Part shown: positions 32,612 to 56,816 of the stretch, piece by piece
Numbering within the stretch: position 1 is the first letter of the stretch
Layout: every line of letters starts with the position of its first letter
Assembly: GCA_051294905.1 (NCBI GenBank)
Contig: CM119382.1
Span: 7,626,001-7,690,000, forward strand
Length of the DNA: 64,000 bases
Direction: 5' to 3'
From: Botryllus schlosseri
Lineage: Eukaryota
Position numbers and translations under genes: made by a program
The notes under the pieces: generated by a model
What the model was told of the DNA's origin: nothing
What the model saw: the letters and a program-made list of their open reading frames with translations, nothing else
Databases searched by the model: none

Positions 32612-34915
32612 TCATCATCATCATCATTGGTTTATTAGCAATTTTATCAGTTCAATACACCACAAAAATGCGATACAATGAAAAGACAGGAAGATGTCGA
32701 AGCGACAAGGAGTAGTCTATGGAATCTGACACCCACCTTGGCCTAGGCGATGTGAAGAGGAGGCATGCACACTGAATGAAAGTAAAGAAGATAGTATAGA
32801 AGAAGAATGCGACAAGAAATAGGGCGGCATGTCATGGGAAGCGAGATCGATAGGTCAGTCGTGGTCCGGTAATCTTGAGGATGGACTGTATTTATTTAGT
32901 AGTAATTGCTTGTATTTCGACTTGAATGTGGACATGCTCGTCGACTGTCGGATGGCCGGCGGGATACTGTTCCACACATCAGGTCCGGCATATTTGATGG
33001 AGCGATGATCTTTTCGGTCGATCATATGATATTTGGACGACGTGGACGCGCGTGTGTTGTACTTGTGCGCTTTTGATTCAGAGGTAAAGAAGTCATTGAA
33101 ATATTCGGGGCAACGACCGCAGTGAAACTGATACATAAACTTGGCGATTTCTAGTTTCCGCATATCTTCTATGTTTAGGACGCCGAATCTCTTCAGCAGC
33201 GACTTATTGGATGGCAGCCAGGCCCCTTTGGGGCCCTAGCTATGATTCGGAGCACTTTATGCTGTAGTTTCTGCAGTGGCTTGAGTGCAGTTTTACTGGC
33301 AGCCCCTAGGGATGGTGTGAACGCGAGGTTCACGTTCGTGTTCTGTGTGTGAACCTCGGAAATTTAGAGGTTCGCGTTCACAACAGAACCTTGGTAGGTT
33401 CTGCACTGTGAACCTTTTGGTAAATTGTAATTTTCACTCCATTATAAGATCTCTGGCTCAAATTTATTGCATTTCAACTGCGGGCTACTCCATGCATGGT
33501 GCCGGCAGCATAATAAATCAACACTAAACGAGCATGCACCATGCACCTCGACAACCTTAAAAGTTTTACTTGCTTTGTTGCAAAAATTTTCTCGGAATAT
33601 CCAGCTTTCCGTTTGTGAATATTTAGTGACTCTCTGCTGTGAGCCTGACCCGCAATCGATATACGTAGTCACTAGTCAGCGAATGATGCTTAGTCAACCA
33701 ATCAATGACATTGATATCGTCTTCTGATGTAATAAATCGAACGGTCGAACTGGGTCAATCTTGACTTCATATCTTTACTGTATCATTAAAACCAAATCCG
33801 TGCTATTAAGGTGCGTGCTACTGCTGCATAACTTGTTGTTTGTGGTATCGGTAGCGAGTATAGAAACCCGTTAAGGCGTAAGCTTATATTCCTTAGTAAG
33901 TCCTCGTCGAAATTGTTGGCAAAGCGACGGAATGTACTGATTTTATGCAATTATTATATCCTTTGATTACCGCGGTTGATACATTTAGCGACGTTTAAAA
34001 CGCCGATATGTACTTCAGCATTGTGGCATTATGTGGGCCGAATCTTCGCTAGGTGTCATGTACATTAATATAGGGCATATTAGGCTATCACTTCATTGAA
34101 AGAAAGGGTTGGAATTAGCAATATGACGTCACGTGACGTCACGAGGTTCACGTTCGTGTTCACACAGAACCTTTCAAAAAGGTTCGCGTTCACACGAACC
34201 CGAACCTTTCAGAGGTTCACACCATCCCTAGCAGCCCCCCAACAGAGGATGCCATAATGTAACTTCGATTGGATTAAGGATTTGAAGAGTATCAGAAGAA
34301 CCCATGCTGGCATGAAGCGCCCAAGGCTGTAGAACAGGCCGCACTTTGGTGATAATTTAGTTTCTAGGGACTGAATATGACTCTTCCAGGACATGTTCGA
34401 GTCCAGTAAAACTCCGAGATATTTGGCATTATCTGTGTTGGAAACGGGCTGACCAGCGATATTAACGGTTAGGTTATTTTTTGAATTAACTGTCAGCAAT
34501 TGCGATTTCGAGGCGTTTATGCAAAGGTTGTTCTGGGCCGTCCACTCATGGACTTTGGGCATTTGGTCACCAGTCAGGGCATCCAGCTCTGCCGTCGAAG
34601 ATGCGGAAGAGAGGAGGTGAGTATCATCAGCGAACAGTGTGGTGTTCAATGAGGAGGTTTCAAAAATGTCGTTGACATATAAGGTGAAAAGGACCGGTCC
34701 AAGTACTGAGCCCTGGGGCACACCACAGGTCACCGGGTGAGGAGAGGACAAGGTGTCTGAGATCGCAACCATTTGTTGGCGTCCAGTGAGGTAACTTTTC
34801 ATGAGCTCAAGTTGTGGGCCCCGAAGTCCGTATCGCGCCAATTTCGAGATGAGAATTTTATGATCTACGCAGTCAAACGCTTTTTTTAGGTCGAGAAAAA
34901 TGCTACATCCCACAT
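32612..34915 (-). mobile_element. 5'-truncated non-LTR retrotransposon (CR1/L2-like LINE), RT C-terminal part, 3' UTR and (ATG)n tail
   Basis: RT motifs FLDLKKAFD, GVPQGSVLGP, LFADD and YLG in ORF 34209-34913. It continues at 33306-32856 after a hAT insertion, with one 1-nt frameshift near 33220. Confidence 0.92.
33307..34230 (-). mobile_element. TAGGGATG hAT family element inserted into the LINE RT
   Basis: TIR tagggatggtgtgaac; perfect TSD gcagcccc; removing it rejoins the RT frame (CWGAA|SKTALKPL). Confidence 0.93.
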
Positions 34916-35668
34916 TTCATTTCCATTTTTTTTTTAGAAAATATGCCTCGAGTCATCAAAAGGCTATAGGTAGGCCTACCGAGTCCATTCCATAAGATTT
35001 ATAATTGAAGTGAAGTCTATTCGATACAGGCCTTACAATTCATATTATAAATGATTGTGGGTTGAAGGTTTGAAACAAAAAATGTTTACGTCGACCTAAA
35101 GTTACTTGAACAACCAATAGAAAAGAAAATCTCTGTCACACACCCGGTAGCTTCCACAAGCAGAAGTAAATGGCTCATGAAGAAAACATCAATAAGAATA
35201 GTAAATGAATGGAACGATTGTATTATCATTGAGTCGAAGGTGTATCGACAAAAGTGGTCCGATGTGAGGCCATAATTGCCATTTTCGAAAATGTTGAAAG
35301 CCAGAGAAATACAACACACAGCACGATCAGCAGGACTCACATCAGCCGGGTAGCAGTCACGTCATGTGGATTATTAAACCGCTGGGTGGAACGAAAGAGC
35401 AGTCAGTGGGCAAATATTTGGGTTTGTTTATTGAACCGCAGATATCAGGGGCCGAGGTGCGTGAGTGGAGCTGCAATAACGGTATCAGGTTTTATTGCCC
35501 CGGAATGAAATTTGGAAGACTGAATTTTGGATATGTAACCATGCTTACCTAGAGCGTATTACATAATGAACGTAACTGTGATGATAGTAGTTAGTGTAGG
35601 CCTACTAATGAACAACCGCGCTTTCAACCGACCGTATTGAATTATTCAATAGACTGAGAATATGTACT

Positions 35669-35949
35669 CATCATCATCATCATTGGTTTATTAGCAATTT
35701 TATCAGTTCAATACACCACAAAAATGCGATACAATGAAAAGACAGGAAGATGTCGAAGCGACAAGGAGTAGTCTATGGAATCTGACACCCACCTTGGCCT
35801 AGGAGATGTAAAGAGGAGGCATGCACACTGAATGAAGGTAAAGAAGATAGTATAGAAAAAGAATGCGACAAGAAATAGGGCGGCATGTCATGGGAAGCGA
35901 GATCGATAGGTCAGTCGTGGTCCGGTAATCTTGAGGATGGACTGTATTT
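35669..35949 (-). mobile_element. Second, short 3'-end copy of the same LINE
   Basis: Near-identical to 32612-32893 including the (CAT)n tail; absent from the paralogous position in unit B. Confidence 0.88.
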
Positions 35950-36151
35950 GAGCAAGCCGATTTGAGCAAGCAATATTGAACATTTAAGATCTGATATAGA
36001 TGTAAAGTGTCATTCTCATACTATACGATGACGGGTGACCTGACGTATCGGTGACCGTAGTTCTTTGACTTCTTTCCATGTTATTAAAGCGTTCAAATTT
36101 AAAAGAGCCATTGAATGTGCTATATTCATACGCATTTGTGAAGGTCTAGAC

Positions 36152-36578
36152 CAGAGGTTGCCAAGACCAAGTCGCTTTGAAAACGACTTGAGGCTTCCCC
36201 ACCCCACAAGATCAAGCTTTACGAGGAGATAGTTTTTCATTTCAGCAAGTAGGCCTACCATGTCTAGCTAACCCCAATATCGATTCTTTAGCTGTTCAAC
36301 TGTGTTGTCAGGTATCGTGCACCACTCATTGTTAAAAATAAAGTGAAAGTGATGAGAATACTATTTTTGTTGTATTTGGCAATAAGAGATTATTTCTATT
36401 GTGGTAACTATGTCCGTCGGCCGTCGCCCATGTTAAAGAGCGCAGCGTTATACTGGCTTGAAGTTTTTCAAACGTGGTTGTTAATATATGTGACCTATTT
36501 AATCTCGATATTGAACTCATGCGGCCTGTACGAAATTTTGAAAGTGGTCCGCGACCCGGTTGGAGTTGGCGACCCCTG
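36152..36578. mobile_element. hAT MITE upstream of JAK-A
   Basis: TIR cagaggttgccaa / ttggcgacccctg; perfect TSD gtctagac; empty site gtctaaac in unit B (~53142). Confidence 0.85.
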
Positions 36579-36919
36579 GTCTAGACCAGTAGCACCATCA
36601 TGTAATTATTCATTTGTCAGGGTTCGTAGCTCTTTCCATGTTATTAAGACATGTGAATGTGCAATCTTGTTGAAGAACTGAGTGTAGTCTAGGCCTAATT
36701 TCTGAAATTCAACTAAAGCCTTTGAATGTGATATTCTTATGATTTTGTGCAGGTCTATACCAGCTGTGTTTTATTTTCTTGAGGAATTATTTATTTATCA
36801 GAGTTGATCATTGTTGTGAGCTATTGCCTCCTAGGAAACGTTATATATATATATATAATATAGGCCTATATAGGCAATGATGAAGCAAAAGATAGACTTC
36901 AAATGGTATTGATAAATGT

Positions 36920-36948
36920 CTCTAAGTCGTTGTATTATTCTACCACAG
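36920..36948 (+). promoter_or_regulatory. Putative branch point and 3' splice (cis or trans) acceptor 60 nt upstream of the JAK-A ATG
   Basis: ctaag...attctaccacAG. Conserved in copy B (ctaac...attctaccacAG, AG at 53323-53324), also exactly 60 nt before the ATG. Confidence 0.6.
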
Positions 36949-37008
36949 TAAACTTCATCAGCATCATGGAAAGTTCATACAATTAGTTAATAATCATCAA
37001 TAAGAACC

Positions 37009-40000
37009 ATGAGTGTTCCGGTGAAGGTATTCACCGGTTTAAGGAAGGCTCACAATATCGCCGACCATATGATCAATCACGAAATAATACACGTTGTCGT
37101 CACGACATCTTCCAAATTCGACGAACTGGCTGAAAAATGCTCCGTCCATTGCGGCATCAAGCCCATGTACGCTTCCTTATTCGCCATATGGGACGCGCGT
37201 AACAAAGTTTGGGCGAATCTGGGAAATTACATTTTCCCGTTGCAGGACTATAACGGTATGGCCGGAGAGGATACCACAGATGGATGTACTTTCGAGTTCA
37301 GAATACGTTTTCTCATGAAAACAGAAACCACAGTGAATGGGCAAAAAGGTGAATCACAAAGATGGGACGCTTACATTGAAGGCGCCAGCCGCGTTATGGA
37401 CAAAGTAATCGTTGACTATTTGTACCGACAAAAGCGCAATGACTTTTTGTTTGATAACATCGCACTGGCGTTAGGCACTGGCGCCGACGATGACTCATTT
37501 TCTTTGGCACTCGGAGTCGCAGCATTAGATCTGTTGTGTCTGTCTCAAATATCTAAAACTAAACTTTCTAACCTCGAAAAGAGTGTTCCCGTGAAGCAGT
37601 TGTTGTCGAAATCGTTCAGAGACCGCCTGCGCGAATACAGCTTTGTAAACCGTTGGCAGATCAAACTAAAATTCAAACACTTCGTAAAGTATCTGATACC
37701 AGCCGCGCAACGTTGGGAAGAAAACGGGCATGAGTTAGACTTCTTCCTGCAACGTTACCTCCTTAATTTAGAACTCTGCACCACGACGTACGGTGTGGAA
37801 CGTTACAATTTAGCCAGGAATGGATACATCACAGTGTCAGCTGATAATGGAATAACTCTTCACGGTGATGAGAATAAGGAAGAGAAATGGTGCGATTTCT
37901 CGGAAATCACGCACATGACGCTGCAGGTTCGGTCGCATGACGATACCGGGTCCGGACAGGTTGTTGAACAAGACACGGCCCAAGAAAATTTTCCGCAAAA
38001 CGCATACATCGTTTGCATCAGTAAGCTTGACGGCACTTGCAAAAATTTCAGCATGGAATCGGGCACAAGCGCCGGGAATCTAGCGTCTTGCATTGATGGT
38101 TATTACAGATTATTAGTTGACGCTCATCATTACTTATGCAAGGACGTGTGCTCACCTGATTTAGTGCGGCATCTACGTTTGAAGTGTCACGGGCCTATAA
38201 CGTGCGGGTACGCTGAGGATCTGCTCCAGGAAAGACACAAGCTAGGAGTAGCGACCATTGGTGATTGCATAATACGTAAGAGCAGAGAAAGCTGGGATGA
38301 GTACTTCGTGAATTCGGTGCATTCTGTAGACCCGTTCAAGACTCGCAACTACAAAATGGACCGGTCTGATGAAAACTTACTGGGGCTTTACGGCTGGCCA
38401 GAGTCGCACAAGCACGAAAACTTGGAAAGTCTGTTAGAAGAATGTGCCGACGGTCGATATGATAACCGCAGAATACCGATAAACCCAAACAAAATAGTGG
38501 CGCCCAAACCGAAACACAAAAGCAATCTTATCGTCCGGCTTGCGCGCGACTCGCTGATCGCGATATATCCAACGGACGACCAGCAGATAAAGCCACGAGC
38601 TGTTCTTATCGAGCTTGACTCTAATGAGAAACAAAACGTCAAACACCTAGGCACTGGCACATTCACAATAGTGAAGCGGTACAAAAACGAGAACACGGGT
38701 CGATGCATGGTCTTCAAAAGCATACTTGAACAGAACGAGCCACAGCAGAACCACCACATTCACATGTCCTTTCAGGACTCCACCGCGCTGCTGAATCGCA
38801 TAAGTCATCGCCATTTCGTGCAGCACCTGGGAATGACTATGAGCCACGTTACCGGGATATGGCTCGAGTACCTGCCTCTCAAATCCATCACGCAGTATCT
38901 GGAGTCGCGCAATCTCGACCTGCGGAACAGTCCTTCGTGGTTTCTACAAGCTCTGTGGCAGGTGACGCACGCATGCCACTATCTTGAAGAAATGGGGTAC
39001 GCACACGGTAATTTACAGGGCAAAAACGTGCTGCTGCAGTGTGACACGCCGCAGCCGCATGTTAAGATATCTGACTCTGGCGTGCGTACCAGGCGGCGAG
39101 TTATTAACGATGGCCGGGACGCCAAGAAGTCTGTCGTGGAACCGATGCTGCCAGCGCCATGGCTGGCGTACGAATTTTGCTTTCGAGATAGAACTTCCGA
39201 TGTCAAATACCCTACCATAGAAGCCGACAAATGGAGTTATGGCGCGACGGTTTGCGAGATTTTGAACTGGGGTAAAATACGATTGGGACCTGTGTACGGT
39301 GGCGAGCTGTATGACCCTATGCGGCAATTTTACAAGCGCGGCGACTTGCGTGGCTGTCTTGGCCTGCCGGAATTGATTACAGGCAGTCAGGAGTTGTGCG
39401 ATTTAATCACAGCATGCTGGTCAGTGGTGCCTGATCAGAGACCGCCGTTTCAGAAAATTCTCAGAGAAATTGGCTCTGCGCTAACGGGCGATTATGTCTT
39501 ACTGTCAATGGCCAGTGAGCCAATCGTCGACGCTGTCAATGAGTTAGACCTCGATGTCCCGACTTACGAAGACGAGAAGCTAACCCGAATCTCCATACTG
39601 GGGGCTGGACATTTTGGTACCGTTGAGCTTTTCGCGTATGATCGTCATCGCAACACCATGACCGAGAAGGTAGCGATAAAGGAGCCGAAGTCGCCTTCTA
39701 TGAAACAGCACAAGGAGTTTATGCAGGAGATCGAAACCATGAAACGCATGAACCATCCGTACGTGGTAAGGCTTTTGGGAGTCACCGAACCGTCGGGACG
39801 TATCGTGATGGAGTATTTGAAAAACGGATCATTAGCGGACTTCATGAAGCGACGTAGGAATGAGGGTAATTGGCTGCCTACATCGCAGTTGCTGAGATAC
39901 TGCTCACAGATTGCCGAAGGCATGACTGCGTTGCAAGAAAAGCGTCTCGTCCATCGAGATCTCGCGCTTAGGAATATCTTACTCGCGGATAATCCAGCCG

Positions 40001-40452
40001 ATATTAAGATATCGGATTTTGGGTTGTCTCGTTTTGTACGAGAGGATCGGGAGTATTACTCTGGAAAGTTGGACGAGTTTCCGGCGTACTGGTACGCGCC
40101 CGAGTGCCTGCGCGCTGACTCAGTGCGGACGTTCGGGTTTGAATCTGACGTCTGGTCGTACGGCATTACGGTGTGGGAGTTATTTTCGTACGGCGATCGG
40201 CCCTGCCATAGAAATCTCGGTCCGATCGACCGGCCCGAGATGGTGGACAGGCTGCGGCGCTTGCTTGAGGACGGCGCTAGGTTGCCGCAGACGGAAAGAT
40301 GCCCCGACGAGGTGTACAAGATGATGCTCGCGTGCTGGGCGTATGACAAGCGCGGTCGGTTGAAGTTTGCCGAGATTAAAGCGGAATGCGACATGATGGT
40401 GCCGCTCGCGAACGCAAACCAACTGACGTACACCCGCAATTTCGAGGGGTGA
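37009..40452 (+). CDS. JAK: Janus kinase, copy A (FERM-SH2-JH2 pseudokinase-JH1 tyrosine kinase), single coding exon, 1147 aa
   Basis: FERM FEFRIRF and ALGVAALDL; SH2-like CHGPIT and IIRKS; JH2 LGTGTF, HGNLQGKNVLL, KISDSG (no HRD/DFG); JH1 GAGHFG, VAIK, HRDLALRN, DFG, activation loop EYY, WYAPEC, SDVWSYG. Start context ACCATG. Confidence 0.96.
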   Translation: MSVPVKVFTGLRKAHNIADHMINHEIIHVVVTTSSKFDELAEKCSVHCGIKPMYASLFAIWDARNKVWANLGNYIFPLQDYNGMAGEDTTDGCTFEFRIRFLMKTETTVNGQKGESQRWDAYIEGASRVMDKVIVDYLYRQKRNDFLFDNIALALGTGADDDSFSLALGVAALDLLCLSQISKTKLSNLEKSVPVKQLLSKSFRDRLREYSFVNRWQIKLKFKHFVKYLIPAAQRWEENGHELDFFLQRYLLNLELCTTTYGVERYNLARNGYITVSADNGITLHGDENKEEKWCDFSEITHMTLQVRSHDDTGSGQVVEQDTAQENFPQNAYIVCISKLDGTCKNFSMESGTSAGNLASCIDGYYRLLVDAHHYLCKDVCSPDLVRHLRLKCHGPITCGYAEDLLQERHKLGVATIGDCIIRKSRESWDEYFVNSVHSVDPFKTRNYKMDRSDENLLGLYGWPESHKHENLESLLEECADGRYDNRRIPINPNKIVAPKPKHKSNLIVRLARDSLIAIYPTDDQQIKPRAVLIELDSNEKQNVKHLGTGTFTIVKRYKNENTGRCMVFKSILEQNEPQQNHHIHMSFQDSTALLNRISHRHFVQHLGMTMSHVTGIWLEYLPLKSITQYLESRNLDLRNSPSWFLQALWQVTHACHYLEEMGYAHGNLQGKNVLLQCDTPQPHVKISDSGVRTRRRVINDGRDAKKSVVEPMLPAPWLAYEFCFRDRTSDVKYPTIEADKWSYGATVCEILNWGKIRLGPVYGGELYDPMRQFYKRGDLRGCLGLPELITGSQELCDLITACWSVVPDQRPPFQKILREIGSALTGDYVLLSMASEPIVDAVNELDLDVPTYEDEKLTRISILGAGHFGTVELFAYDRHRNTMTEKVAIKEPKSPSMKQHKEFMQEIETMKRMNHPYVVRLLGVTEPSGRIVMEYLKNGSLADFMKRRRNEGNWLPTSQLLRYCSQIAEGMTALQEKRLVHRDLALRNILLADNPADIKISDFGLSRFVREDREYYSGKLDEFPAYWYAPECLRADSVRTFGFESDVWSYGITVWELFSYGDRPCHRNLGPIDRPEMVDRLRRLLEDGARLPQTERCPDEVYKMMLACWAYDKRGRLKFAEIKAECDMMVPLANANQLTYTRNFEG

Positions 40453-41199
40453 CAGTAAGTCAGTTGAGAAATGATTCCGCTCTGATAACTTGAGTAGGTA
40501 ATAGGTATTGCTTACCGAATCAGCACTACCCACTCAAACGATCGCGTTTTTAGACTGCTGCCTGTTGTACAATATTTTCAATGGTTATATGAAATCTAGG
40601 CAATAGCCGTACCCGGACATCGTTTGATCAGTAACATAATACGGTACCTATACTTTTTCGGAGTATTCAAAGTAGGATTTACTTCCACTTCTACTTGAAC
40701 AGATTCTAGGCAAAACTGCTTGCGTTTTGAGCCTAAATTGTGAAAAGTAGAAATAATGCGGTGATGATCTTGAAGATGCGTGCCGCGATTTAGCGAGTCG
40801 CTACCTCCATCTCTAATTACTGCTGAAAACATGCTACCCCTTGACCAAATCTGCTTTTTGGAACTACTTGAGTAAGTAGTTTTGGATCATATATTTCTAC
40901 GTCCAGTTGAGGTAGTTTTGATGTGTTTCGGAAACTAATATTTATAAGTTTTTAATTGAAGTAGAAATTTGTGGCGTTACTTCTACTCCTGCCTGAGTAG
41001 CAATGATGACTTATTTGACCACTTTGCTCATAAAACCGTTTAGTAGAAGCGGAAGTCTTCGTGAAACAGCCATTTGAATATGCAGTGCAAGTCGGCCAGA
41101 CGAAATTGAGTAGGCCTACTCAAAAACAGGAAGAAGTATTTGTCATTGACCACCTCTGCGCACTACTGCCCTATTCACTGTATTCAGCTTAAGAATTGC

Positions 41200-44150
41200 C
41201 GGTTCTGTCACTCCTGGGTATTTTCAGCCGATTAGCGTCGAGATTGATCAGCATTAACGGGTACCACGTTCCTTGCATTATTATTATTAATAACATCATG
41301 TTCAGGCACCGCTAGCAACTATATTTTCATGGTCAATCGGGGATTCTAGATTCGCGATAAATGGAAATGCGGTGGTTGGTATTTCTACGCAATATGGTAC
41401 AAGAGGAAATGTGATGTATAGTACGTGTCGTACTGCGTTATCATGGTATGTTTGGTGTCATGTACACTTTTTACAGTATTCCCTATACCTCGTTGTCGTT
41501 ATCTGATTATCTGTCGCTGTGTGAAATGATATCAACCTTCCGACAGGGTTTACCGTCGCATTTCGTTGCCCGAAAACCCAGCGTTTTTTTATAAGATTGA
41601 CGCGGCGAAATCCTTGTTGCGTCACATATCAATATCAATACGTGAGCATTTCTGCTCGTGCTAGTCCTAACTCTTTTAAATCAACTTCGTCCAACGATTG
41701 AGCTCTTTCATAATTTTAAACTCGCTTCAAGCTGTGCAGCACAGCAGCGGCTTTCGACCCGTACTGGGTCGCAGGTCTGCTTTACGTCATCACTATTTTC
41801 GTACATTTTTAGCTATATTTTTACGATAGCCGAAACTACGTTTGCTGTCGCCAGTGTGATGTTTATTTTATCGCATATCGCCGTTCCGAGTCTCGGCCGT
41901 TCTCCTGCCTGTTTCACTGGTGACCTTTTGTTTCCTGTAATTTTCACGCGTCCGCCATGCCTCCGTGAGTAACAGCGATGCAGTCGTTAGCGCCAGTCTT
42001 TGAAAAAGACGAACTCTTGCCATACTTCGCCCGGTACGTTGTGCAACAATATTGAATCCATATGTTCCCGCGCGTCTTAAGGAACGGATTTTCTCACCGT
42101 TCCAGAAAGTTTCGGTAATTCACGCAGTTGGCCGTAAAGCTCGTTGCGGTTGCCTTAGTCATGCCCGCGGGCCCAACCGTAATCAAACACGGCGTTACCA
42201 ATATATGTGCTAATTTTCGATTGTGGGTAGGTTTACTTCGAAAGCAATCTTATTTTAGTGTCAGTCGCCTTGCAGTGTGCCTCAATCTGTGATTATTTTT
42301 GTACCGACGCGATGCATTCCCTAACAGTATTAAGATGCGTCTGGTGTGGTGTAGTTTCAGATCATCGCAGTTATTATTTTCAATTATTGGTCGCCGATAT
42401 TGTGTATGTGATATATTTTTCATCTTGTCAACCTTGACGTGTTTTTTTTTAAATCAAAAGTTGCCCAACCCAACTACTCGTCTACGGTAATTTTGTGATG
42501 AGAATAGGTGTTGAGCGGAATTTGAATTTATCAACATTATTCCCAAATTGCGTGCTGCACCCTGGGTGACTTCAGCCAAGCTTGCTATTCGGGTACAATC
42601 ATGTAATTCTATGGTACCGTCAGAAAATTCACCTTGTGTCTGTCACGCATCGTTGTTTTCTTTATGATACGTCACAGTGCTCGCTCATCGGTCATCGCTT
42701 TGCCTTGAGCCGACTGATCTAGAAGTTGGCAACGGCAACATTATGAGAGTATCGCATAGCTTGTTGAATGATCTCAACGGTGGGTTATGAAATATTCAGT
42801 CGTGTTGCGTGTGTCACCACTTCGTGCACGCAATCAGTTGCATTTTTGTGGCTCCAATAAAGTATTGATGCCCGATTGCATTATCACAACAAGGGTAGGA
42901 CCAGCCACGATCCAGTAGACAGGGACAGATGCAGCGCGTGTTGGAGCCTTCAGTAATCGTTGCTCAAATGCTCATATTGTTGAAGAAATGTAACCGATGT
43001 AACACAGCACGGCTATGTATTTCATGTCCACTGTTGGAAGTTCCGTCACTGTCTTCCAACGTAACCATAGGGAGTAAATCACACGCAGACAGCAGTATTG
43101 CTGGCAATCAGAAAATGATAGAACTCGCAACTGCAGGGAGGAAATCGCAGCGCTGATGCAACAAGAGGCTCGTTTGATTGCTGCAGCGGCGGACATTAAC
43201 GTTAGTCAACATCCTGTGTAATCATTGTGAGGTCACATATTTCGCGGCATTATGCAGAACGCAGCAATGTCTGGTCACAGGAAATGATCCATGCGGCATC
43301 GGGTGGGCTATGTATTGCAGAAGATGCTTTGGTCCTAGAATTCTGATGATTAAAAGTGACGCGCCGAAATAGGGAACCGCTAGCCCCAATGAGTGATCGC
43401 GTGCACGCATTAACGTTGAAGTAGAGATACTGTGATATTATTACTTGGGAATAATAAGTAGGCTATCTATACCTTGAATTGAACGCATCAAGTAGTTTAG
43501 CCTGTATGGCGTCATTCTGTCTACGTCCGAAAATTGGGGGGGGGAGGGGGGGAAACTACGCCCCTTCTGAAAGCAACACGCACTGCAGGGTCTTCGCAGA
43601 ACTGAAAATTCAACCTGCAATCTTGGATCATCTTTTGAAACTATGAACCCTAGCCTACTTTCGCAACGTTCCTCGGAACGTTTCATGGATCTTCGTTATT
43701 TACGCGTTAGTTTTTCTAAATCAGTAGGCATACTTGTACTTTTGCTTATATCTTGACCACTTTTGATAACCTTATGTCATGACATGGGTCTATCTATATG
43801 TGTTCTGTGTTTGGAATTGCGCGCACACGCGAAATCGCTCATCCATATTATAGCTTGGCTTTCGGCGCTAGTCAAGGTGGTGCATGATTTAGCTTTAGAC
43901 AAATCTCCCTTAAAGCAGATTTCGCACTCTTCGAAAATTTACCAACATTACTCGTAATTCTGATTTAGTAGCATCAATGACAACTTGGCAATCGCTGGTT
44001 ACATATATGGTGACGTCTGACGTGGCTATCAGCTGCATCTGAGGACCACAATCGATTGCAGTGATTGACCCCAAGTCTGTGGCAGGAAGGTAATCCGGCG
44101 TAAAAACTGCTGCCAAATAAAAATGCGGACCAGTCATCCACTGTAACAGT
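41200..44150 (-). pseudogene. Possible decayed intronless gene with TIR-like, death-domain-like and kinase-like segments (unit A copy)
   Basis: By-eye translation only: 41993-42130 VP*DAREHMDSILLHNVPGEVWQEF (death-domain-like); 41246-41337 DHENIV...GTWYPLMLI (kinase IV-V-like); ~43770-44030 DVTIYV...EICFKGDL...QAIIWMSDF (TIR-like). Many stops and frameshifts. Confidence 0.3.
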
Positions 44151-44261
44151 CACTACGTGACGAAGAAGAGTTAATAAATATGTATTGTAACTCAATTCTC
44201 ATTTCAGTCATATTTAATTGTCACCCGAGTTTTGGGAATTATAAGCTGCACAAGTGCACAT

Positions 44262-47035
44262 TAGGGATGGTGTGAACCTCTAAAACAGTGGTTCCCAACC
44301 TTTTTTGACTCATCGCCCCCTTATGAAGCTCAAAACATTTTCATCGCCCCCCTATAAGAAAGTGTCCCAAATCAGAGTTTTATTGACCTCTCGTTACCAT
44401 AGTTCCCTCTAAGCTGCGCGCATGCCCAAAGCGCATTGCTGACATGGCCTCTGCGCACAAAAAATAAAATACGATGTGATGACGTACTTTTAGTCAACAC
44501 CACAAAATTAAGAAGAAAATAGGGAATTCAGTAGTCAAATCAAAGTGATGACCTCTTTTAGTCGTTAGGCACTGCTGTCCAATGGACCGCGCAGTGAGTT
44601 GGTGATTGCGCAGCGCGCAGAGACAGGGGTTTGCCTAAATCCTTAACGTTCGACAATAAGTTAGATGGCCATTACTGTACTATTCGGTATCATAACAACT
44701 TACTGTCCTCCACAAATCTAACCGCACAGCTGGGTTATCAACGTTTTGGCAACCATTGTAGTTACTAGTAGGCTATAAAAATAAGGCACATCAAGAAGCA
44801 ATGTTGTGTCACGTCTAAAAAGTAGACGAATGAAAACTACATCGGTGATTGAAAATCAACTGTTTCGCTTGCTTCAAATGTCATGCATAGGGTTGCCAAC
44901 TGTGCGAAAGCTCTGGGAGTCAAATATTGCAAAACATAAGGCCAAACTGACTGAAATATAACTAAATTATCTTCATCGTTCGAGATGTCTTTACATGTTC
45001 ATAGAAATCAGTTTCAATTGTTCAATTTCGCTTATATTACGCTGCAAGAAAGTGGTGGAATTCATTTCCGTGCGCATAAGGTCGTCAAGCTCAAGGTACA
45101 TTTAGAGACGTCAAGAATTCTACTACCAAATCGACGCGAAAACGAACCAGCAAATTTTTCAATATATCAGCTTGCTTAGGTAGGCCTGGTAGCCTAAATG
45201 ATAACCTACACAACTAATTGACTCTTGCAATGCGGGAAGCAGATAAAGTGACTCGGGACCTATGATATCGATGTTATATATGACAACGGTTTGTGGGGCG
45301 TAATACCCCAGTATGCCAACTGCAGGTCAAAATTATGTAAAACAACCCCAATATGTTCTTGTGTGCGCGAGTAAGCACCACTTGCTACTTATGTAAATGC
45401 TGAAAACAAATTTTCACAGTGATAGTTGAAGAAATTCGAACGATCTGAAATAGTGCCAACGTGCCAATATTCCCAAATTTGGCCCAAATATGCGCTAATT
45501 GACAACACTGGCTACTTCGCAACGACACGACACACTAATTAGCAGTTCTGACAGAAGTGTTCGTGCTTGCTGGCTCACGCAGAAACTGCTGATGTTTGAT
45601 TATGATGTAACTATTGCGTTATAGCCATTGACAATAAACGTACGCCAACAACTCGATGGTATGAGGTTGAGAGAGCTCGTTAACAAGTGGAATAGATGTA
45701 ATATGATGCAAATTTGGACTTTAAATCTTTTTCAGGTATCACAGGCTAAATTGGGTCAAATATTGAGTCACTTTTCTATCAATATCGATCTCATATAACT
45801 TGAACTAAGCAATAAACCAAGCATATAATGAATAATATTTGATTGAAAGGTCCATTTTCGCCCCCTTCGTCCGTTTTCGCCCCCCTATCGCCCCCTTAGT
45901 TATTTTCGCCCCCCTAGATCGCCAAATCGCCCCCTGGGGGGCGATATCGCCCACGTTGGGAACCACTGCTCTAAAAGGTTCAGGTTCGTGTGAACGCGAA
46001 CCTTTTTGAAAGGTTCTGTGTGAACGCGAACGTGAACCTCATGACGTCACGTGACGTCATATTGCTAATTCCAAGCCTATCTTTCAATGTAGGGATAGCC
46101 TATATTAATGTACACACGATACGTAGCAACGACTCCTGCCACATAATGCCACAATTCTGAAGTACATATTGCCGTTTTAAACGTCGCTAAATGTATCAAC
46201 TGATGCAATCAAATGATATAATGCTCCCATAGAATGAATATCATCCGTCGCTTTTCACAATTTCGACGATGACTTGCCAGGGAATATAAGCTTACGCCCT
46301 AACGGTCTTGGCCAGATCGGACAATGTAGTCGGCTTCTGAGTATTGTTTCATTGATATTGAGCAGGGTGTAAATCAGATTTTTGTACTTGATACCGATGT
46401 TAGGCTACCCCACAAGTTATACAGCTGTAGCCAACACATTGCTGGCACGGGTTTAGTTTTAATGATATACAGTAAACATATGAAGTCAAGATTGACCCCG
46501 TACGCCTGCTAGATTTGTTACATCAAAAAACGATATTAATTTCATAGATTGGTTGAATAAGCATCATTCGCTGACTACATGTATAGTGTATGTCGCTCGT
46601 GATGCTGTGTGATTGTGGGCCAAGCTCACAGCAGAGAGTCACTAAACAATAAACATTCACGAACGGAAAGCTAGTAAAATCTTTGAGATTGTCAAGGTGC
46701 ATGCTCGTTTTGTGTTGATTTCTTATGCTGCCAGCCCCATGCATAGACCGCAGTTGAAATGCAATAAATTCGAACCACAGATGTCATAATGAAGTGAAAA
46801 TTCTAATATATGAAAAATGTCCACAGTGCAGAACCTACCAAGGTTCTGTTGCGAACGCGAACCTCTCAATTTCCGAGGTTCACACACAGAACGCGAACGT
46901 GAACCTCACGTTCACCTTCACATCACCCCTAGTCTACCTTGCATGTCGCATTTCACTGTTACATTTTTGTAGTGTTATGTTGATATGTAATGTATACGAA
47001 TAAAGATTCTCTCTCTCTCTCTCTCTCTCTCTCTA
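44262..47035 (+). mobile_element. TAGGGATG hAT family copy with nested insertions
   Basis: TSD gtgcacat on both sides; empty site at ~61733 in unit B. Carries an AATAAA+(CT)n retroposon 3' fragment at ~46932-47032. Confidence 0.85.
44286..45968. mobile_element. hAT element (CAGTGGTTCCCAAC TIR) nested in 44262-47035
   Basis: Perfect TSD ctctaaaa; further hAT-like ends inside (~44399, ~44886, ~45510). Confidence 0.88.
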
Positions 47036-47846: not shown

Positions 47847-48293
47847 AAATTGAATGAACGGTTATGATATTGTACTAGGGATGGGCAAAATGTATCATAA
47901 GTGCCGTACTCGAATCTGAATTGAGTCGAGAAGGAAGCTACGATTTTCTCGGGTTCTAGAATTGAATGACACAGCGAGATATTTTAACAGATAGTATTAC
48001 TCAGTTTCGTTACTTTCTCTTGCTAGAAGCCTTTAAAGTTAATCCCAGAGCGTTAGCCTAAGACTGCGTCCGTCGGTGGAAGCGGCATTTCTGTGAAATA
48101 GTGATTGAAGCTCAGTATGAAGTAGATATGGTCGAAAAATACCAAACCATCTTCAAAGTCAAGTGACTGTGTCAAGTGTGTATTACTCTGGAAATCTAGA
48201 CGAATTCCTGGCGTACTGGTACTGCGTACGCGCCTCAGTGCCTGCGCGCTCACTCAGTGCGGACATTATGATATGAATCTGGTGTCTGGTCGT

Positions 48294-51320: not shown

Positions 51321-51539
51321 CTGGTCATATACGGCGATTGACCCTGCCGCAGAAATCTCGGTCCGACCGATCGCCCGAGATGGTGGACAGGCCGCTCGAA
51401 GATGGCGCTAGGTTTCCGGAGACGAAAATAACCCCCAACTATGTGTACAGGATGATGCGAGATTGCTGGGCGTATGACAAGTGCGGGCGGTTGAAGTTTG
51501 CCGAGAGCGGAACGCGACAGGCTGGTGCCGCTCGCGAAC

Positions 51540-52374
51540 GGGATATTCCGAACCTGGACAACAAAAGTTGGAAGCACCGCATTCCCAAATCTTCCGAAAT
51601 TTGGTGCATGCATCGATGAGTCAATTTCGATGAAAATAAAGTTTATTTGAGGGAAATTGAACTCCGGGGTCAAAAGTTAGGTCATTTTGAAAATTGACGA
51701 TTTTCTGTTCATTTTAGTTCTGCAGCATTCAGGTTTTATCAATGTAAAATTAGACAAGGTGTAAACAGACGTTGGATTACGGTTGAGATTTGGCACTGAG
51801 TTTTCTGAGAAGCTAGTCTATTGGTCTATATCCCCATGTGGTATTAAATGCCATGTGGTGTAGTGTTAAAGGTGAAATTGGGGTGGAACTTGATCGGTAG
51901 TCTGAAATCGGTCAAGCATTACACAATTAGGAATGCGAATTGTTCAAAACCCTTTAAAAATATTCCAGCGAGTAGGGTATCATATGACTCAACTTATATT
52001 CATCACTGCCACTGAAGACAATATATGTCAAGTTTCAACTACCTATTTGAAACCAAGAGCTGTTCCGTGGGTATATATTAATGAGAATAGATATTAGCTA
52101 CTCATTGCTCCCGCCGTTTATCCGCCCGTTGCTAAATTTCTCAACTTTGACATTCAGAGTTTTCTTTTTTATAAGGAGCACAACTTTACCGGAAGCAGAA
52201 AATGAGCAGAAAATCGTCAATTATCAAAATGACGTGACTTTTGACCCCAGATTTCAATTTTCCTCAAATAAACTTTTTTGTGTTTGAAATTATCTCATCT
52301 ATGCATGTACAAAATTTCAGAAGATTTAGGAATGTGGTGGTTCCAACTTTTGTTGTCCAGATTGGGAATGGCCC
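51540..52374. mobile_element. MITE with ~140-bp TIRs (GGG...CCC termini) at the junction of the JAK fragment and unit B
   Basis: 51540-51680 is the reverse complement of ~52240-52374; no TSD, consistent with an adjacent deletion. Confidence 0.75.
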
Positions 52375-53384: not shown

Positions 53385-56300
53385 ATGAGTGTTCCGGTTA
53401 AAGTCTTCACCGGATTAAAGAAGGCTCAGAATATCACCGAGCATATGATCAATCACGAGATAATAGACGTTATCGTCACAACATCTTCAAAATTCGATGA
53501 GCTGGTTCAAAAATGCTCCGTCCATTGCGGCATCAAGCCCATGTACGCTTCCTTATTCGCCATATGGGACGCGCGCAACAAAGTTTGGACAAATCTGGGA
53601 AATGACATTTTCCCGTTGCAGGACCATAACGGTATGGCCGGAGAGGATACCACAGCTGGATGTACTTTCGAGTTCAGAATACGTTTTCTCATGAAAACAG
53701 AAACTACAGTAAATGGACAAAAAGGGGAATCACAAAGATATGACGCCAGCCGGGTTATGGACAAAGTAATCGTTGAATATTTGTACAGACAGAGGCGCGA
53801 TGACTTTTTGTTTGATAACATCGCACTTGCGCCAGGGACTGACGCCGACGATGACTCATATACTTTGGCACTCGGAGTCGCAGCATTAGATCTGTTGTGT
53901 CTGTCTCAAATATCTAAAACTAAGCTTCAGATCCTCGAAAAGAGGGTTCCCGTGAAACGGTTGTTGTCAAAATCATTCAGAAATCGCCTGCGCCACTGCG
54001 GCTTGGTAAACCGTTGGCAGATCAAAGTAAAATTCAAACACTTCGTACGGTATCTGATACCAGTCGCGCAACGTTGGGAAGATAGCGGACATGACTTGGA
54101 CTTATTCCTGCGACGTTACCTCCTTAATTTAGAACTCTTCACCGCGACGTATGGCGTGGAACGTTACGATTTAGCCACGAAAGGGTACATCACAGTGTCA
54201 GCTGATAATGGAATAACTCTTCATGGTGATGGGAAAAAGGAAGAGAAATGGTGCGATTTCTCCGAAATCACGCACATGACACTGCAGGTCCGGTCGCATG
54301 ACGATACTGGGTCTGTCCAGGTTGTTGAACAAGACGCCGCCCAAGAAAATGTTCCCCAAAGCGCATTCATTGTTAACATCAGTAAGCTTGACGGCACTTG
54401 TAAAACATTCAGTATGAACTCGGGCACAAGCGCCGAAAATCTAGCGTCTTGCATTGACGGGTATTACAGATTGTTAGTTGACGCTCATCATTACTTATGC
54501 AAGGGCGTGTGCTCAACTGATTTAGTACAACACATACGTTTGAAGTGTCACGGGCCTATAACGTGCGGGTATGCTGAGAAACTGCTCCAGGAAAGACACA
54601 AGCTAGGAGTAGCAACAGTTGGTGATTGTGTAATACGTAAGAGCAGAGAAAACTGGGATGAGTACTTTGTGAACTCGGTACTTTCTGTAGACCCGTTCAA
54701 GACTGGCAACTACAAAATGGACCGGTCCGACGATAACCTGCTGGGACTTTACGGCTGGCAGGAGTCGCACAAGCATGAAAACTTGGAAAGTCTGTTAGAA
54801 GAATGTGCCGAAGGGCGGCATGATAACCGCAAAATACCGATAAACAAAAGCAAAATCTTAGCGCCAAAACCGAAACACAAAAGCAATCTTATCGTCCGTC
54901 TATCGCGTGACTCGTTGATCGCGATATATCCGACGGACGACCAGCAGATAGGGCCACGGGCTGCTCTTATCGAGCTTGACGCTAATGCGAAACAAAACGT
55001 TAATCATTTAGGCACTGGCGCATTCACAATAGTGAAGCGATACAAAAACGAGAACACGGGCCGATGCATGGTCTTCAAAAGCATACTTGAACAGAACGAG
55101 CCACAGCAGAACCACCACATTCACACGTCCTTTCAAGACTCTACCGCGCTGCTGAATCGTATAAGTCATCGGCATTTCGTGCAGCACCTTGGAATGACTA
55201 TGAGCCACGTTACAGGGATATGGCTCGAGTACCTGCCTCTCAAATCCATCACGCAGTATCTGGAGTCGCGTAATCTCGAACTGCGGAACAGTCCTGCGTG
55301 GTTTTTACACGCTCTGTGGCAGGTGACGCACGCATGCCACTATCTGGAAGAGATGGGGTTAGCGCACGGTAATCTACGGGGAAAAAACATACTTCTGCAG
55401 TGTGACGCGCCACAGCCGCATGTTAAGATATCCGACTCTGGCGTGCGTACCAGGCGGCGAGTTATGAACGATGGCCGGGTCGCTAAGACTTCGATTGTGG
55501 ATCCGATGCTGCCAGCGCCGTGGCTCGCGTACGAGTTTTGCTTTCGAGATAGATCTTCTGGTATCAAATACCCTACCATAGAAGCCGACAAATGGAGTTA
55601 CGGCGCTACGGTTTGCGAGATTTTAAACTGGGGTAAAATACGATTGGGGCCTGTGTACGGCGGTGAACTGCATGGCCCTATGCGGCAATTCTACCAGCAC
55701 GGCGACTTGCGTGGCTGTCTTGGCCTGCCGGAATTGATTACAGGCAGTCAGGAGTTATGTGATTTAATCACAGCATGCTGGTCAGTGGCGCCTGATCAAA
55801 GACCGCCGTTTCAGAAAATTCTCAGAGAAATTGGCTCTATACTAACGGGCGGTTATGTCTTACTGTCAGTGGCTAGTGAGCCAATCGTCGAAGCTGTCAT
55901 TGAGTTAGACCTCGATGTCCCGACTTACGAAGACGAGAAGCTAACACGGATTTCCATATTAGGGGCTGGACGTTATGGTACTGTTGAGCTTTCCGCATAT
56001 GATCGTCATCGTAACACTTTGACAGAGAAGGTAGCGATAAAAGAGCCGAAGGATTCTTCTTCTATGAAACAGCACAATGAGTTTATTCAGGAGATCGAAA
56101 CCATGAAACGCACGAACCTCCCGTACGTGGTAAGGCTTTTGGGGGTCACCGAACCATCGGGACGTATCGTGATGGAGTATTTGAAAAATGGATCATTAGC
56201 GGACTTCATGAGGCGACGTAGGAATGAGGGTAATTGGCTTCCAACATCACAGTTGCTGAGATACTGCTCGCAGATTGCCGAAGGCATGACTGCGTTGCAA

Positions 56301-56816
56301 GAAATGCGCCTCGTCCATCGAGACCTTGCGCTTAGGAATATCTTACTCGCTGATAATCCTTCCTATATTAAGATATCGGATTTTGGGTTGTCCCGTTTTG
56401 TACGAGAGGATCGGGAATATTACTCTGGAATAATAGACCATTTTCCGGCGTTCTGGTACGCGCCTGAGTGCCTTCGCCCTGACTTAGTGCGGTCATTTGG
56501 CTTTGAATCTGACGTCTGGTCGTACGGCATTACAGTGTGGGAGTTATTTACGTACGGTGACTTTCCCTGTCATGAAAATCTTCGTTCGGTCAGCAAGTCC
56601 GAGATTGCGGACAAGCTGCGGCGCTGGCTCGAGGATGACGGTAGGTTGCCGCAGACAGTCAAGTGCCCCGACGAGGTTTACAAGATGATGCACGAGTGCT
56701 GGGCGTATGACAAGCTCAAGCGGTGGAAGTTTGATAAGATTAAAGCGGAATGCGACAGGCTGGTGCCGCTCGCGAACGCAAACCAACTGACATACACCCG
56801 CAATTCCGAGGGGTGA
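53385..56816 (+). CDS. JAK: Janus kinase, copy B (tandem paralog), single coding exon, 1143 aa
   Basis: Same architecture with catalytic motifs intact (GAGRYG, VAIK, HRDLALRN, DFG, EYY). Colinear with copy A apart from a 15-nt and a 3-nt in-frame indel. Confidence 0.96.
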   Translation: MSVPVKVFTGLKKAQNITEHMINHEIIDVIVTTSSKFDELVQKCSVHCGIKPMYASLFAIWDARNKVWTNLGNDIFPLQDHNGMAGEDTTAGCTFEFRIRFLMKTETTVNGQKGESQRYDASRVMDKVIVEYLYRQRRDDFLFDNIALAPGTDADDDSYTLALGVAALDLLCLSQISKTKLQILEKRVPVKRLLSKSFRNRLRHCGLVNRWQIKVKFKHFVRYLIPVAQRWEDSGHDLDLFLRRYLLNLELFTATYGVERYDLATKGYITVSADNGITLHGDGKKEEKWCDFSEITHMTLQVRSHDDTGSVQVVEQDAAQENVPQSAFIVNISKLDGTCKTFSMNSGTSAENLASCIDGYYRLLVDAHHYLCKGVCSTDLVQHIRLKCHGPITCGYAEKLLQERHKLGVATVGDCVIRKSRENWDEYFVNSVLSVDPFKTGNYKMDRSDDNLLGLYGWQESHKHENLESLLEECAEGRHDNRKIPINKSKILAPKPKHKSNLIVRLSRDSLIAIYPTDDQQIGPRAALIELDANAKQNVNHLGTGAFTIVKRYKNENTGRCMVFKSILEQNEPQQNHHIHTSFQDSTALLNRISHRHFVQHLGMTMSHVTGIWLEYLPLKSITQYLESRNLELRNSPAWFLHALWQVTHACHYLEEMGLAHGNLRGKNILLQCDAPQPHVKISDSGVRTRRRVMNDGRVAKTSIVDPMLPAPWLAYEFCFRDRSSGIKYPTIEADKWSYGATVCEILNWGKIRLGPVYGGELHGPMRQFYQHGDLRGCLGLPELITGSQELCDLITACWSVAPDQRPPFQKILREIGSILTGGYVLLSVASEPIVEAVIELDLDVPTYEDEKLTRISILGAGRYGTVELSAYDRHRNTLTEKVAIKEPKDSSSMKQHNEFIQEIETMKRTNLPYVVRLLGVTEPSGRIVMEYLKNGSLADFMRRRRNEGNWLPTSQLLRYCSQIAEGMTALQEMRLVHRDLALRNILLADNPSYIKISDFGLSRFVREDREYYSGIIDHFPAFWYAPECLRPDLVRSFGFESDVWSYGITVWELFTYGDFPCHENLRSVSKSEIADKLRRWLEDDGRLPQTVKCPDEVYKMMHECWAYDKLKRWKFDKIKAECDRLVPLANANQLTYTRNSEG

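What the first reader, a model, noticed from the sequence alone, without database searches (positions are those of the whole stretch)
40060..40449. Paralog divergence is concentrated in the JH1 C-lobe (substrate and SOCS-docking surface)
Hand counts: about 12 differences in the first 100 aa, about 15 in the ~170 aa from the JH1 start to EYYSG, but about 34 in the last ~133 aa. The densest block is RPCHRNLGPIDRPEMVDRLRRLL (A) vs FPCHENLRSVSKSEIADKLRRWL (B), plus KLDEFPAY vs IIDHFPAF right after the activation-loop YY. Known: this JAK-insertion/alpha-G region holds the GQM motif of JAK1/JAK2/TYK2 that SOCS3 binds; neither copy has GQM. Inference: diversifying selection on inhibitor or substrate specificity, or a gene-conversion tract boundary.
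Basis: partly seen in the sequence, partly recalled or inferred. Interest (0 to 1): 0.72.

Follow-up and report, generated by a model that had tools for sequence, protein, structure and literature searches.

The report
Fast-evolving docking surface in duplicated JAK
Two neighbouring copies of a sea-squirt Janus kinase differ most in the outer surface of the kinase's lower lobe, because one copy has changed there at close to the neutral rate while keeping an intact kinase; selection for a new function is possible but not shown.

Summary
The window holds two intronless full-length JAK genes: A (37009-40452) and B (53385-56816). They differ at 34 of the last 129 residues (26%), against 12% elsewhere. 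A scan statistic puts the strongest cluster of amino-acid-changing differences there (p about 2e-4 to 8e-4). Silent differences do not cluster.

dN is 0.15 in the C-lobe and 0.057 elsewhere. dS is 0.29 and 0.25. A codon-model test favours a change in omega (0.59 vs 0.28, p=0.02) over a change in age (p=0.43). Both noncoding flanks have the same divergence as the gene body. A gene-conversion or age boundary is therefore not supported.

Omega stays below 1, so diversifying selection is not shown. In a related control pair the same region has omega 0.03, so the acceleration followed the duplication. It lies mainly on copy B.

A previously unnoted pseudogene fragment of this same C-lobe (48180-48293 plus about 51321-51540) agrees with A at 20 of 22 informative sites.

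The changes fall in the insertion loop, helix G and the P+1 region, at the positions where vertebrate JAK1 binds SOCS1. Catalytic motifs and the buried helix F are untouched.

Most likely B has lost constraint on this docking surface or re-specialised it. This is a lineage-specific paralog story of modest interest.

The parts
37009..40452 (+). JAK copy A, 1147 aa, in a single ORF. Domains are FERM F1/F2/PH-like, SH2-like, JH2 and JH1. This is the conservative copy.
   Evidence: ORF found, Pfam domains. Catalytic motifs are intact. Its tree branch is short at 0.03. It has 27 derived residues against 68 in B.
53385..56816 (+). JAK copy B, 1143 aa, in a single ORF with the same architecture. This is the fast-evolving copy.
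   Evidence: ORF found, Pfam domains. Motifs are intact. Its tree branch is 0.12. Tajima relative-rate test gives p=3e-5. Both indels are derived in B.
40060..40449 (+). JH1 C-lobe of A (aa 1018-1147), the region of the finding.
   Evidence: 34 of 129 residues differ from B. dN is 0.153, dS is 0.291, omega is 0.52.
56424..56813 (+). JH1 C-lobe of B (aa 1014-1143), the counterpart of 40060-40449.
   Evidence: The alignment is gapless here. 16 residues are polarised as derived in B against 5 in A. The lineage leading to B has Nd 24.5, Sd 8.5 and omega 0.79.
40186..40305 (+). Densest block, aa 1060-1099: the shortened JAK insertion loop, helix G and the G-H loop. It includes the GQM-equivalent triplet (RPE in A, KSE in B).
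   Evidence: Nd is 21.3 and Sd is 9.7 in 40 codons, with omega 0.6-0.67. Secondary structure comes from the pLDDT-90 model.
48180..48293 (+). Pseudogene fragment psiC, part 1. It is homologous to A 40053-40160 (aa 1015-1050).
   Evidence: blastn gives 79.8% identity to A and 76% to B. It carries a 7-nt insertion and an in-frame stop.
51321..51540 (+). Pseudogene fragment psiC, part 2. It is homologous to A about 40186-40414 (aa 1060-1135). About 3 kb of interspersed repeats (48294-51320) separate it from part 1.
   Evidence: blastn gives 80.5% identity to A and 77% to B. It carries three deletions and an in-frame stop. Its omega is 1.02. It agrees with A at 20 of 22 informative amino-acid differences.
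37564..37743 (+). Secondary, weaker cluster of amino-acid differences in FERM F2 (aa 186-245).
   Evidence: Nd is 19 and Sd is 7, with omega 0.69 by NG86 and 1.05 by ML. Scan p is 0.03 after the C-lobe is removed. The changes are split evenly between A and B.

Best explanation
After a tandem duplication of an intronless JAK gene in a stolidobranch sea squirt, the two copies evolved asymmetrically. Copy A kept the ancestral sequence. Copy B evolved about 2.5 times faster overall.

On the exposed C-lobe surface of B's kinase domain, amino-acid substitutions accumulated at close to the neutral rate, with omega about 0.8. This surface comprises the P+1/alpha-EF region, the short JAK insertion loop, helix G, and the H-I loop. 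The catalytic machinery, the buried helix F and the reading frame were preserved.

The most likely mechanism is loss of purifying selection on a partner-docking surface in one redundant copy. In vertebrate JAKs this surface holds the substrate peptide and the SOCS1/3 pseudosubstrate. The result would be a still-active kinase with altered or lost partner recognition.

Shown here: the local rise in dN without a matching rise in dS, the asymmetry between copies, normally strong constraint on this region, and intact catalytic motifs. Inferred only: that the surface docks partners in tunicates, and that B is expressed and active.
For: - dN is 0.153 in the C-lobe against 0.057 elsewhere, while dS is 0.291 against 0.254.
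- The scan statistic gives p 2e-4 to 8e-4 for nonsynonymous differences and nothing for synonymous ones.
- In the codon-model test, omega differs with time left free (p=0.02; 0.59 vs 0.28). Time does not differ with omega left free (p=0.43).
- The flanks have K=0.226 (5') and 0.219 (3'), equal to the gene-body dS. The whole unit is therefore one age.
- In the control pair L001/L002 the same region has omega 0.03, against 0.06 for the whole gene. The C-lobe is normally very constrained.
- The matched-divergence pair P0001/P0002 shows 15 of 129 differences in the C-lobe, against 34 of 129 for A-B (p=0.004).
- Branch dN in the C-lobe is 0.046 for A, 0.107 for B and 0.188 for the outgroup path. 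Outside it the values are 0.019, 0.037 and 0.173.
- Polarised changes are 27 in A and 68 in B (p=3e-5). In the C-lobe they are 5 and 16.
- Using psiC as a third taxon gives omega 0.22 for A, 0.79 for B and 1.02 for psiC. psiC equals A at 20 of 22 informative residues.
- B has no indel or stop in the region, whereas psiC has 4 indels and 2 stops. P(0 indels) is 0.006 if B were evolving neutrally.
- HRDL, DFG, APE, VAIK, the glycine loop and the YY pair are intact in both copies.
- 27 of 33 differences fall on columns that vary among 60 JAKs. Only 1 falls among the 33 most conserved columns. Helix F has none.
Against: - The region was chosen after the fact on amino-acid differences, which biases omega upward.
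- The test separating omega from time reaches only p=0.02.
- YN00 estimates dS at 0.40 in the C-lobe, giving omega 0.35 against 0.31. By that one method dS rises nearly in step.
- The densest block has a somewhat raised dS of 0.46-0.51.
- Relaxation and positive selection predict the same pairwise numbers when omega is near 1.
- The substitutions are rather radical (R to F, G to R, two L to W). 53% have a negative BLOSUM62 score against 33% elsewhere (p=0.07). This also fits adaptive change.
- There is no expression evidence for either copy. Neither protein is on record.
- The surface location rests on secondary structure and column variability. Solvent exposure was not computed.
Confidence: 0.5

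Rival explanations
1. Adaptive diversification. Positive selection reshaped B's C-lobe surface, and to a smaller degree A's, to change substrate or inhibitor specificity. This could mean escaping or switching a SOCS-like pseudosubstrate or a phosphatase, or specialising towards one of the two tunicate STATs.
For: - The changes sit at the alignment equivalents of JAK1 F1046, G1097, Q1098, T1100 and V1101, which contact the SOCS1 KIR and SH2 domain (PMC5908791).
- In the dense block dN is 0.28-0.30. That is at or above the noncoding neutral divergence of 0.15-0.23.
- Eleven of the 34 differing codons carry 2-3 nucleotide changes.
- The substitutions are radical.
- The frame and the fold core are strictly kept.
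- The region is normally under omega 0.03.
Against: - Omega is never significantly above 1. It is 0.59 for the C-lobe, 0.67-0.71 for the dense blocks and 0.79 on the B lineage.
- Only two sequences are available, so no site model is possible.
- The substituted columns are those that vary freely among JAKs.
- All tunicate JAKs lack GQM and have a shorter loop, so SOCS docking at this site is unproven for tunicates.
Confidence: 0.3
2. An age or gene-conversion effect. Either the first 3 kb of the two genes were homogenised by conversion and the C-lobe escaped, or the C-lobe of one copy was overwritten from a more diverged donor. Under this reading the excess reflects time, not selection.
For: - YN00 gives dS 0.40 in the C-lobe against 0.20 elsewhere.
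- ML neutral time is 0.81 against 0.65, and 1.30 in the dense block.
- A partial C-lobe copy, psiC, lies 1.8 kb upstream of B. Its limits (A 40053-40414) nearly coincide with the divergent region.
Against: - The time difference is not significant (p=0.43), whereas the omega difference is (p=0.02).
- Synonymous differences show no clustering.
- Both flanks have K of about 0.22, equal to the gene-body dS.
- In the C-lobe, A and B are still each other's closest full-length relatives, and P0001/P0002 remain closest to each other.
- psiC resembles A, not the divergent copy B, so it cannot be the donor of B's changes.
- A itself is under omega 0.22 since its node with psiC.
Confidence: 0.07
3. Copy B is simply on its way to becoming a pseudogene. 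The C-lobe happens to be where the decay shows first.
For: - B is faster in nearly every domain and carries both indels.
- Whole-gene omega for the A-B pair is 0.26, against 0.06 in the control pair.
- Changes on the B lineage in the C-lobe are spread evenly over codon positions, 12:15:12, as in psiC.
- No expression record exists.
Against: - B has an intact 1143-codon ORF after a dS of about 0.25.
- There are no indels or stops in the C-lobe, where the neighbouring true pseudogene has 4 and 2 (P=0.006).
- Omega outside the C-lobe is about 0.23-0.3.
- All catalytic motifs and the conserved core columns are kept.
Confidence: 0.1

Closest known systems
Vertebrate JAK1/JAK2/TYK2 versus JAK3: GQM motif and SOCS1/SOCS3 sensitivity
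   Same: Paralogous JAKs differ in the insertion-loop and helix-G surface of JH1. In vertebrates that difference decides whether the SOCS KIR/SH2 pseudosubstrate inhibitor can bind (PMC5908791). The A/B differences fall on the aligned positions.
   Different: No tunicate JAK examined has GQM, and the loop is about 7 residues shorter with no alpha-FG helix predicted. Ciona has only one SOCS1/2/3/CISH-like gene (PMC3296744). Whether that gene uses a KIR is not known. The duplication here is a recent, local, lineage-specific tandem event, not a whole-genome duplication.
Single-copy Ciona JAK and the other tunicate JAK2-like genes (Styela clava, Clavelina lepadiformis)
   Same: The domain architecture is the same. 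A and B nest inside the tunicate JAK clade with 100% support.
   Different: Ciona is reported to have one JAK (PMC3296744). Here there are two intact tandem copies plus a C-lobe fragment, all without introns. Styela's older pair shows no special C-lobe excess: 0.35 there against 0.23-0.55 in the other domains.
Asymmetric evolution of tandem duplicates (relaxation or neofunctionalisation of one copy)
   Same: One copy is conservative and one is accelerated. Omega for the pair is raised 4-fold over the orthologue control. The acceleration is concentrated on an interaction surface rather than the catalytic core.
   Different: Nothing unusual. This is the textbook pattern. The only special asset is the junction pseudogene fragment, which serves as a same-age neutral reference.

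Membership tests
Janus kinase (JAK) family | FERM (F1, F2, PH-like F3) plus SH2-like domain plus pseudokinase JH2 plus tyrosine kinase JH1, in that order | tested here: met
   Both ORFs hit Pfam FERM_F1, FERM_F2 and Jak1_Phl, with two PK_Tyr_Ser-Thr stretches. FERM_F2 and Jak1_Phl pass the curated cut-off. FERM_F1 is just below it. The SH2-like hit is weak and seen only in B.
Janus kinase (JAK) family | Catalytically competent JH1: glycine loop, VAIK lysine, HRDLAxRN, DFG, APE and the tandem activation-loop tyrosines | tested here: met
   All motifs are present in A and B. The model built on the 62-sequence alignment has pLDDT 90 and matches JAK3, JAK1, JAK2 and TYK2 kinase domains at TM 0.82-0.84.
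Janus kinase (JAK) family | Phylogenetic placement among JAKs | tested here: met
   A and B form a clade sister to P0001/P0002. This lies inside the tunicate JAKs, which are sister to vertebrate JAKs.
SOCS1/SOCS3-sensitive JAKs (JAK1, JAK2, TYK2) | GQM motif at the start of helix G | tested here: not met
   The aligned triplet is RPE in A and KSE in B. All the tunicate sequences lack GQM.
SOCS1/SOCS3-sensitive JAKs (JAK1, JAK2, TYK2) | Full-length JAK insertion loop with an alpha-FG helix between helices F and G | tested here: not met
   The loop is about 7 residues shorter than in vertebrate JAKs. No helix is predicted between aa 1060 and 1075. EGFR and ErbB4 kinases match the model as well as JAKs do.
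Positively selected (diversifying) region | Omega significantly above 1 for the region or for a class of sites | tested here: not met
   Omega is 0.44-0.59 for the C-lobe, 0.6-0.71 for the dense blocks and 0.79 for the B lineage. Omega=1 is not rejected (p=0.10 to 0.44). Site models are not possible with two sequences.
Gene-conversion tract boundary | A step in synonymous and noncoding divergence coinciding with the step in dN | tested here: not met
   The synonymous Fisher test gives p=0.58. The likelihood test on time gives p=0.43. Flank K of 0.22 equals the gene-body dS. Only YN00 shows a 2-fold dS rise.

The most novel reading that the evidence does not exclude
Copy B's kinase C-lobe was remodelled by positive selection so that it no longer binds, or binds a different, pseudosubstrate regulator or substrate. 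That would be an independent tunicate parallel to the vertebrate split between JAK1/2/TYK2 and JAK3 in SOCS sensitivity. The junction pseudogene psiC preserves the pre-divergence sequence and so offers a natural ancestral-state reference.
Probability: 0.2. Interest if true: 0.55.

Novelty: new member of a known kind. Interest (0 to 1): 0.33.

Why it matters
Tunicates are the closest invertebrate relatives of vertebrates and are usually described as having a single JAK. A recent tandem pair would be a small natural experiment if one copy keeps the kinase core while rewriting the surface used in vertebrates for substrate and SOCS docking. It would show how JAK regulation diversifies after duplication. 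As it stands, the result is a well-supported but ordinary case of asymmetric paralog divergence. Its value is as a lead for expression and binding studies, not as a new mechanism.

Tried and rejected
- Single-sequence AlphaFold of the A JH1 domain failed (pLDDT 33). It was replaced by a run on a 62-sequence alignment.
- Synonymous polarisation with the outgroup L001 is impossible. pS is above 0.9, so the sites are saturated. Only dN was decomposed by branch.
- More close relatives for site models were sought in three protein searches and one cluster look-up. Only P0001, P0002 and P0123 exist in the collection. DNA for P0002 was not retrievable.
- Expression or annotation evidence for A and B was sought. 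Neither protein is on record.
- psiC was tested as the donor of a conversion explaining the excess. This was rejected because psiC matches A, not the divergent B.
- The position of psiC relative to A and B is unresolved. Quartet patterns are 12 (A+psiC), 6 (A+B) and 1 (B+psiC), with a saturated outgroup and a long B branch.
Solvent exposure and spatial clustering of the substitutions could therefore not be computed.

Full report
**What is there.** The window carries two uninterrupted ORFs on the + strand. A is 37009-40452 (1147 aa) and B is 53385-56816 (1143 aa). Both have the complete JAK architecture: FERM F1/F2, a PH-like F3, a pseudokinase and a kinase domain. Only B gave a weak SH2-like Pfam hit. 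Their nearest named relatives are the JAK2-like proteins of the ascidians Styela clava, Ciona and Clavelina. In a maximum-likelihood tree A and B are sisters. Their clade is sister to a pair of unnamed Logan proteins, P0001 and P0002. All of these lie inside the tunicate JAKs. Since the split, A's branch is 0.03 and B's is 0.12.

**Checking the observation.** There are 12 differences in the first 100 residues, 15 in 183 residues for 836-1018, and 34 in 129 residues for 1019-1147. The quoted peptides are exact.

By Nei-Gojobori, dN is 0.153 in the last 129 codons and 0.057 in the rest. dS is 0.291 and 0.254. Fisher's test gives p=6e-7 for nonsynonymous differences and p=0.58 for synonymous ones.

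Because the region was picked by eye, I ran a gene-wide scan statistic with codon-column permutation. The maximum nonsynonymous cluster is always in this region, peaking at aa 1063-1122. The p-values are 2e-4 to 8e-4 for windows of 30 to 129 codons. Synonymous differences show no cluster at all (p 0.65-0.95).

A weaker second cluster lies in FERM F2 at aa 186-245, with p=0.03 after removing the C-lobe.

**Age or conversion versus selection.**
- I fitted a Goldman-Yang type codon model (F3x4 frequencies, kappa 2.44) with two partitions. Letting omega differ while neutral time is free improves the fit (p=0.02; omega 0.59 vs 0.28). Letting time differ while omega is free does not (p=0.43).
- Omega=1 cannot be rejected for the C-lobe (p=0.10). 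The background omega of 0.278 is rejected (p=0.012).
- The estimates depend somewhat on method. NG86, LWL85 and ML give omega 0.44-0.52 against 0.23-0.30. YN00 gives dS 0.40 and omega 0.35 against 0.31. This is the main caveat.
- Independent of codon models, the noncoding flanks are the same age as the gene body. K is 0.226 just upstream, 0.219 just downstream of the stop codon, and 0.15-0.18 further downstream. An older tract would have to be confined to the C-lobe alone.

**Is the C-lobe simply a loosely constrained region?** It is not.
- A third relative, P0123, came with DNA (L002). It gives a control pair with L001 at dS 0.88. Omega there is 0.06 for the whole gene and 0.03 for the C-lobe, one of the lowest of all domains.
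- P0001 and P0002 have the same overall protein divergence as A and B, yet show only 15 differences in the 129 C-lobe residues. A-B shows 34 (p=0.004). The two pairs do not differ in the rest of the protein (p=0.58).
- Three-point decomposition of dN with L001 gives, in the C-lobe, 0.046 for A, 0.107 for B and 0.188 for the long path to the outgroup. Outside it the values are 0.019, 0.037 and 0.173. The acceleration is therefore post-duplication, present in both copies, and strongest in B.

**Which copy changed.** With three outgroup proteins, 27 differences are derived in A and 68 in B (Tajima relative-rate p=3e-5). In the C-lobe the counts are 5 and 16, with 13 unresolved. The 5-residue deletion and the 1-residue insertion are both derived in B.

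**A new piece of evidence: psiC.** A self-comparison of the window turned up a fragment of a third JAK C-lobe between the two genes. It lies at 48180-48293 and about 51321-51540, split by 3 kb of interspersed repeats. It is homologous to A 40053-40160 and 40186-40414.
- It has four indels and two in-frame stops, so it is a pseudogene fragment.
- It sits at the junction of the two duplication units, which are roughly 35231-48167 and 52430-63729.
- Its nucleotide distances are 0.152 to A and 0.239 to B, against 0.18 for A-B.
- In a three-taxon comparison over 96 codons, A has Sd 5 and Nd 4 (omega 0.22). The lineage leading to B has Sd 8.5 and Nd 24.5 (omega 0.79). psiC has omega 1.02, as a pseudogene should.
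- At the amino-acid differences between A and B, psiC agrees with A at 20 sites and with B at 2.
- Changes on the B lineage are spread evenly over codon positions (12:15:12), as in psiC. Yet B has no indel or stop where psiC has six lesions. P(0 indels) is about 0.006 if B were unconstrained.
- psiC's limits nearly coincide with the divergent region. I could not connect this to the excess, because psiC resembles the conservative copy. I leave the coincidence unexplained.

**Where the changes sit.** A model of A's JH1 built on a 62-sequence alignment has pLDDT 90. It matches JAK3, JAK1, JAK2 and TYK2, and equally EGFR and ErbB4 kinase domains, at TM 0.82-0.84.

| Element | Residues (A) | A/B differences |
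|---|---|---|
| P+1 / alpha-EF region | about 1020-1027 | 4 |
| Following loop | about 1036-1041 | 3 |
| Helix F | 1044-1059 | 0 |
| Insertion loop | 1060-1075 | 8 |
| Helix G | 1076-1087 | 5 |
| G-H loop | 1088-1099 | 4 |
| Helix H | 1100-1109 | 2 |
| H-I loop | 1110-1119 | 3 |
| Helix I | 1120-1135 | 4 |

The alignment to mouse JAK1 can be read against the published SOCS1-JAK1 contacts: F1046, G1097, Q1098, M1099, T1100 and V1101 (PMC5908791). The equivalents in A/B are Y/F 1027, R/K 1075, P/S 1076, E/E 1077, M/I 1078 and V/A 1079. Five of the six positions differ.

Of the 33 differences, 27 fall on columns that vary among 60 other JAKs (2 bits or more). Only 1 falls among the 33 most conserved C-lobe columns. 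All catalytic motifs are intact in both copies.

**Limits of the SOCS reading.** No tunicate JAK in the alignment has GQM. All have an insertion loop about 7 residues shorter than in vertebrates. The absence of GQM is therefore not a feature of this pair. Ciona is reported to have one JAK, two STATs and one SOCS1/2/3/CISH-like gene (PMC3296744). Whether that SOCS inhibits through this surface is unknown. The surface is best described as the generic substrate and regulator docking face of the C-lobe.

**Conclusion.** The conversion or age reading is not supported. The excess reflects a local rise in omega after duplication, mostly in copy B, on a normally well-conserved docking surface of an otherwise intact kinase. 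Omega does not exceed 1, so relaxed constraint or subfunctionalisation is the economical reading (about 0.5). Adaptive re-specialisation is a live alternative (about 0.3). The data available here cannot separate the two.

Noticed in passing
window 48180-48293 and 51321-51540: Pseudogene fragment of a third JAK JH1 C-lobe (aa about 1015-1135 only). It has 4 indels and 2 stops. It lies at the junction between the two tandem duplication units and 1.8 kb upstream of copy B. It may be a remnant of a lost third copy or a templated insertion at the duplication junction.
   Followed up: partly
window 24584-26637, 33307-34230 (-), 45969-46938, 48294-48830, 50337-51320: An interspersed repeat family of about 0.5-1 kb with 70-84% identity between copies. 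Two copies interrupt the psiC fragment and one interrupts the region downstream of A.
   Followed up: no
window 51539-51715 and 52199-52375: An inverted repeat of about 177 bp at 86% identity, between psiC and the upstream region of copy B.
   Followed up: no
window 37564-37743 (A aa 186-245) and the B counterpart: A second, weaker cluster of amino-acid differences in FERM F2. This subdomain binds receptor Box1 in vertebrate JAKs (from my own knowledge, not checked here). Omega is 0.7-1.05, and the changes are split evenly between A and B, unlike the rest of the gene.
   Followed up: partly
window 37369-37383 (A aa 121-125) and B aa 895: B has a derived 5-residue deletion in the F1-F2 junction and a derived 1-residue insertion in the JH1 N-lobe.
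   Followed up: yes
window 37009-40452 and 53385-56816; L001 251-3679; L002 214-3645: Whole-gene omega for the A-B pair is 0.26, against 0.06 for the related pair L001/L002. The entire gene, not only the C-lobe, is under weaker constraint after the duplication. All four CDSs are uninterrupted on their contigs, but the Logan contigs may be transcripts.
   Followed up: partly
window 40186-40236 (A aa 1060-1076): The tunicate JAK insertion loop is about 7 residues shorter than in vertebrate JAKs and has no predicted alpha-FG helix. The JH1 model therefore matches EGFR and ErbB4 kinase structures as well as it matches JAK structures.
   Followed up: partly
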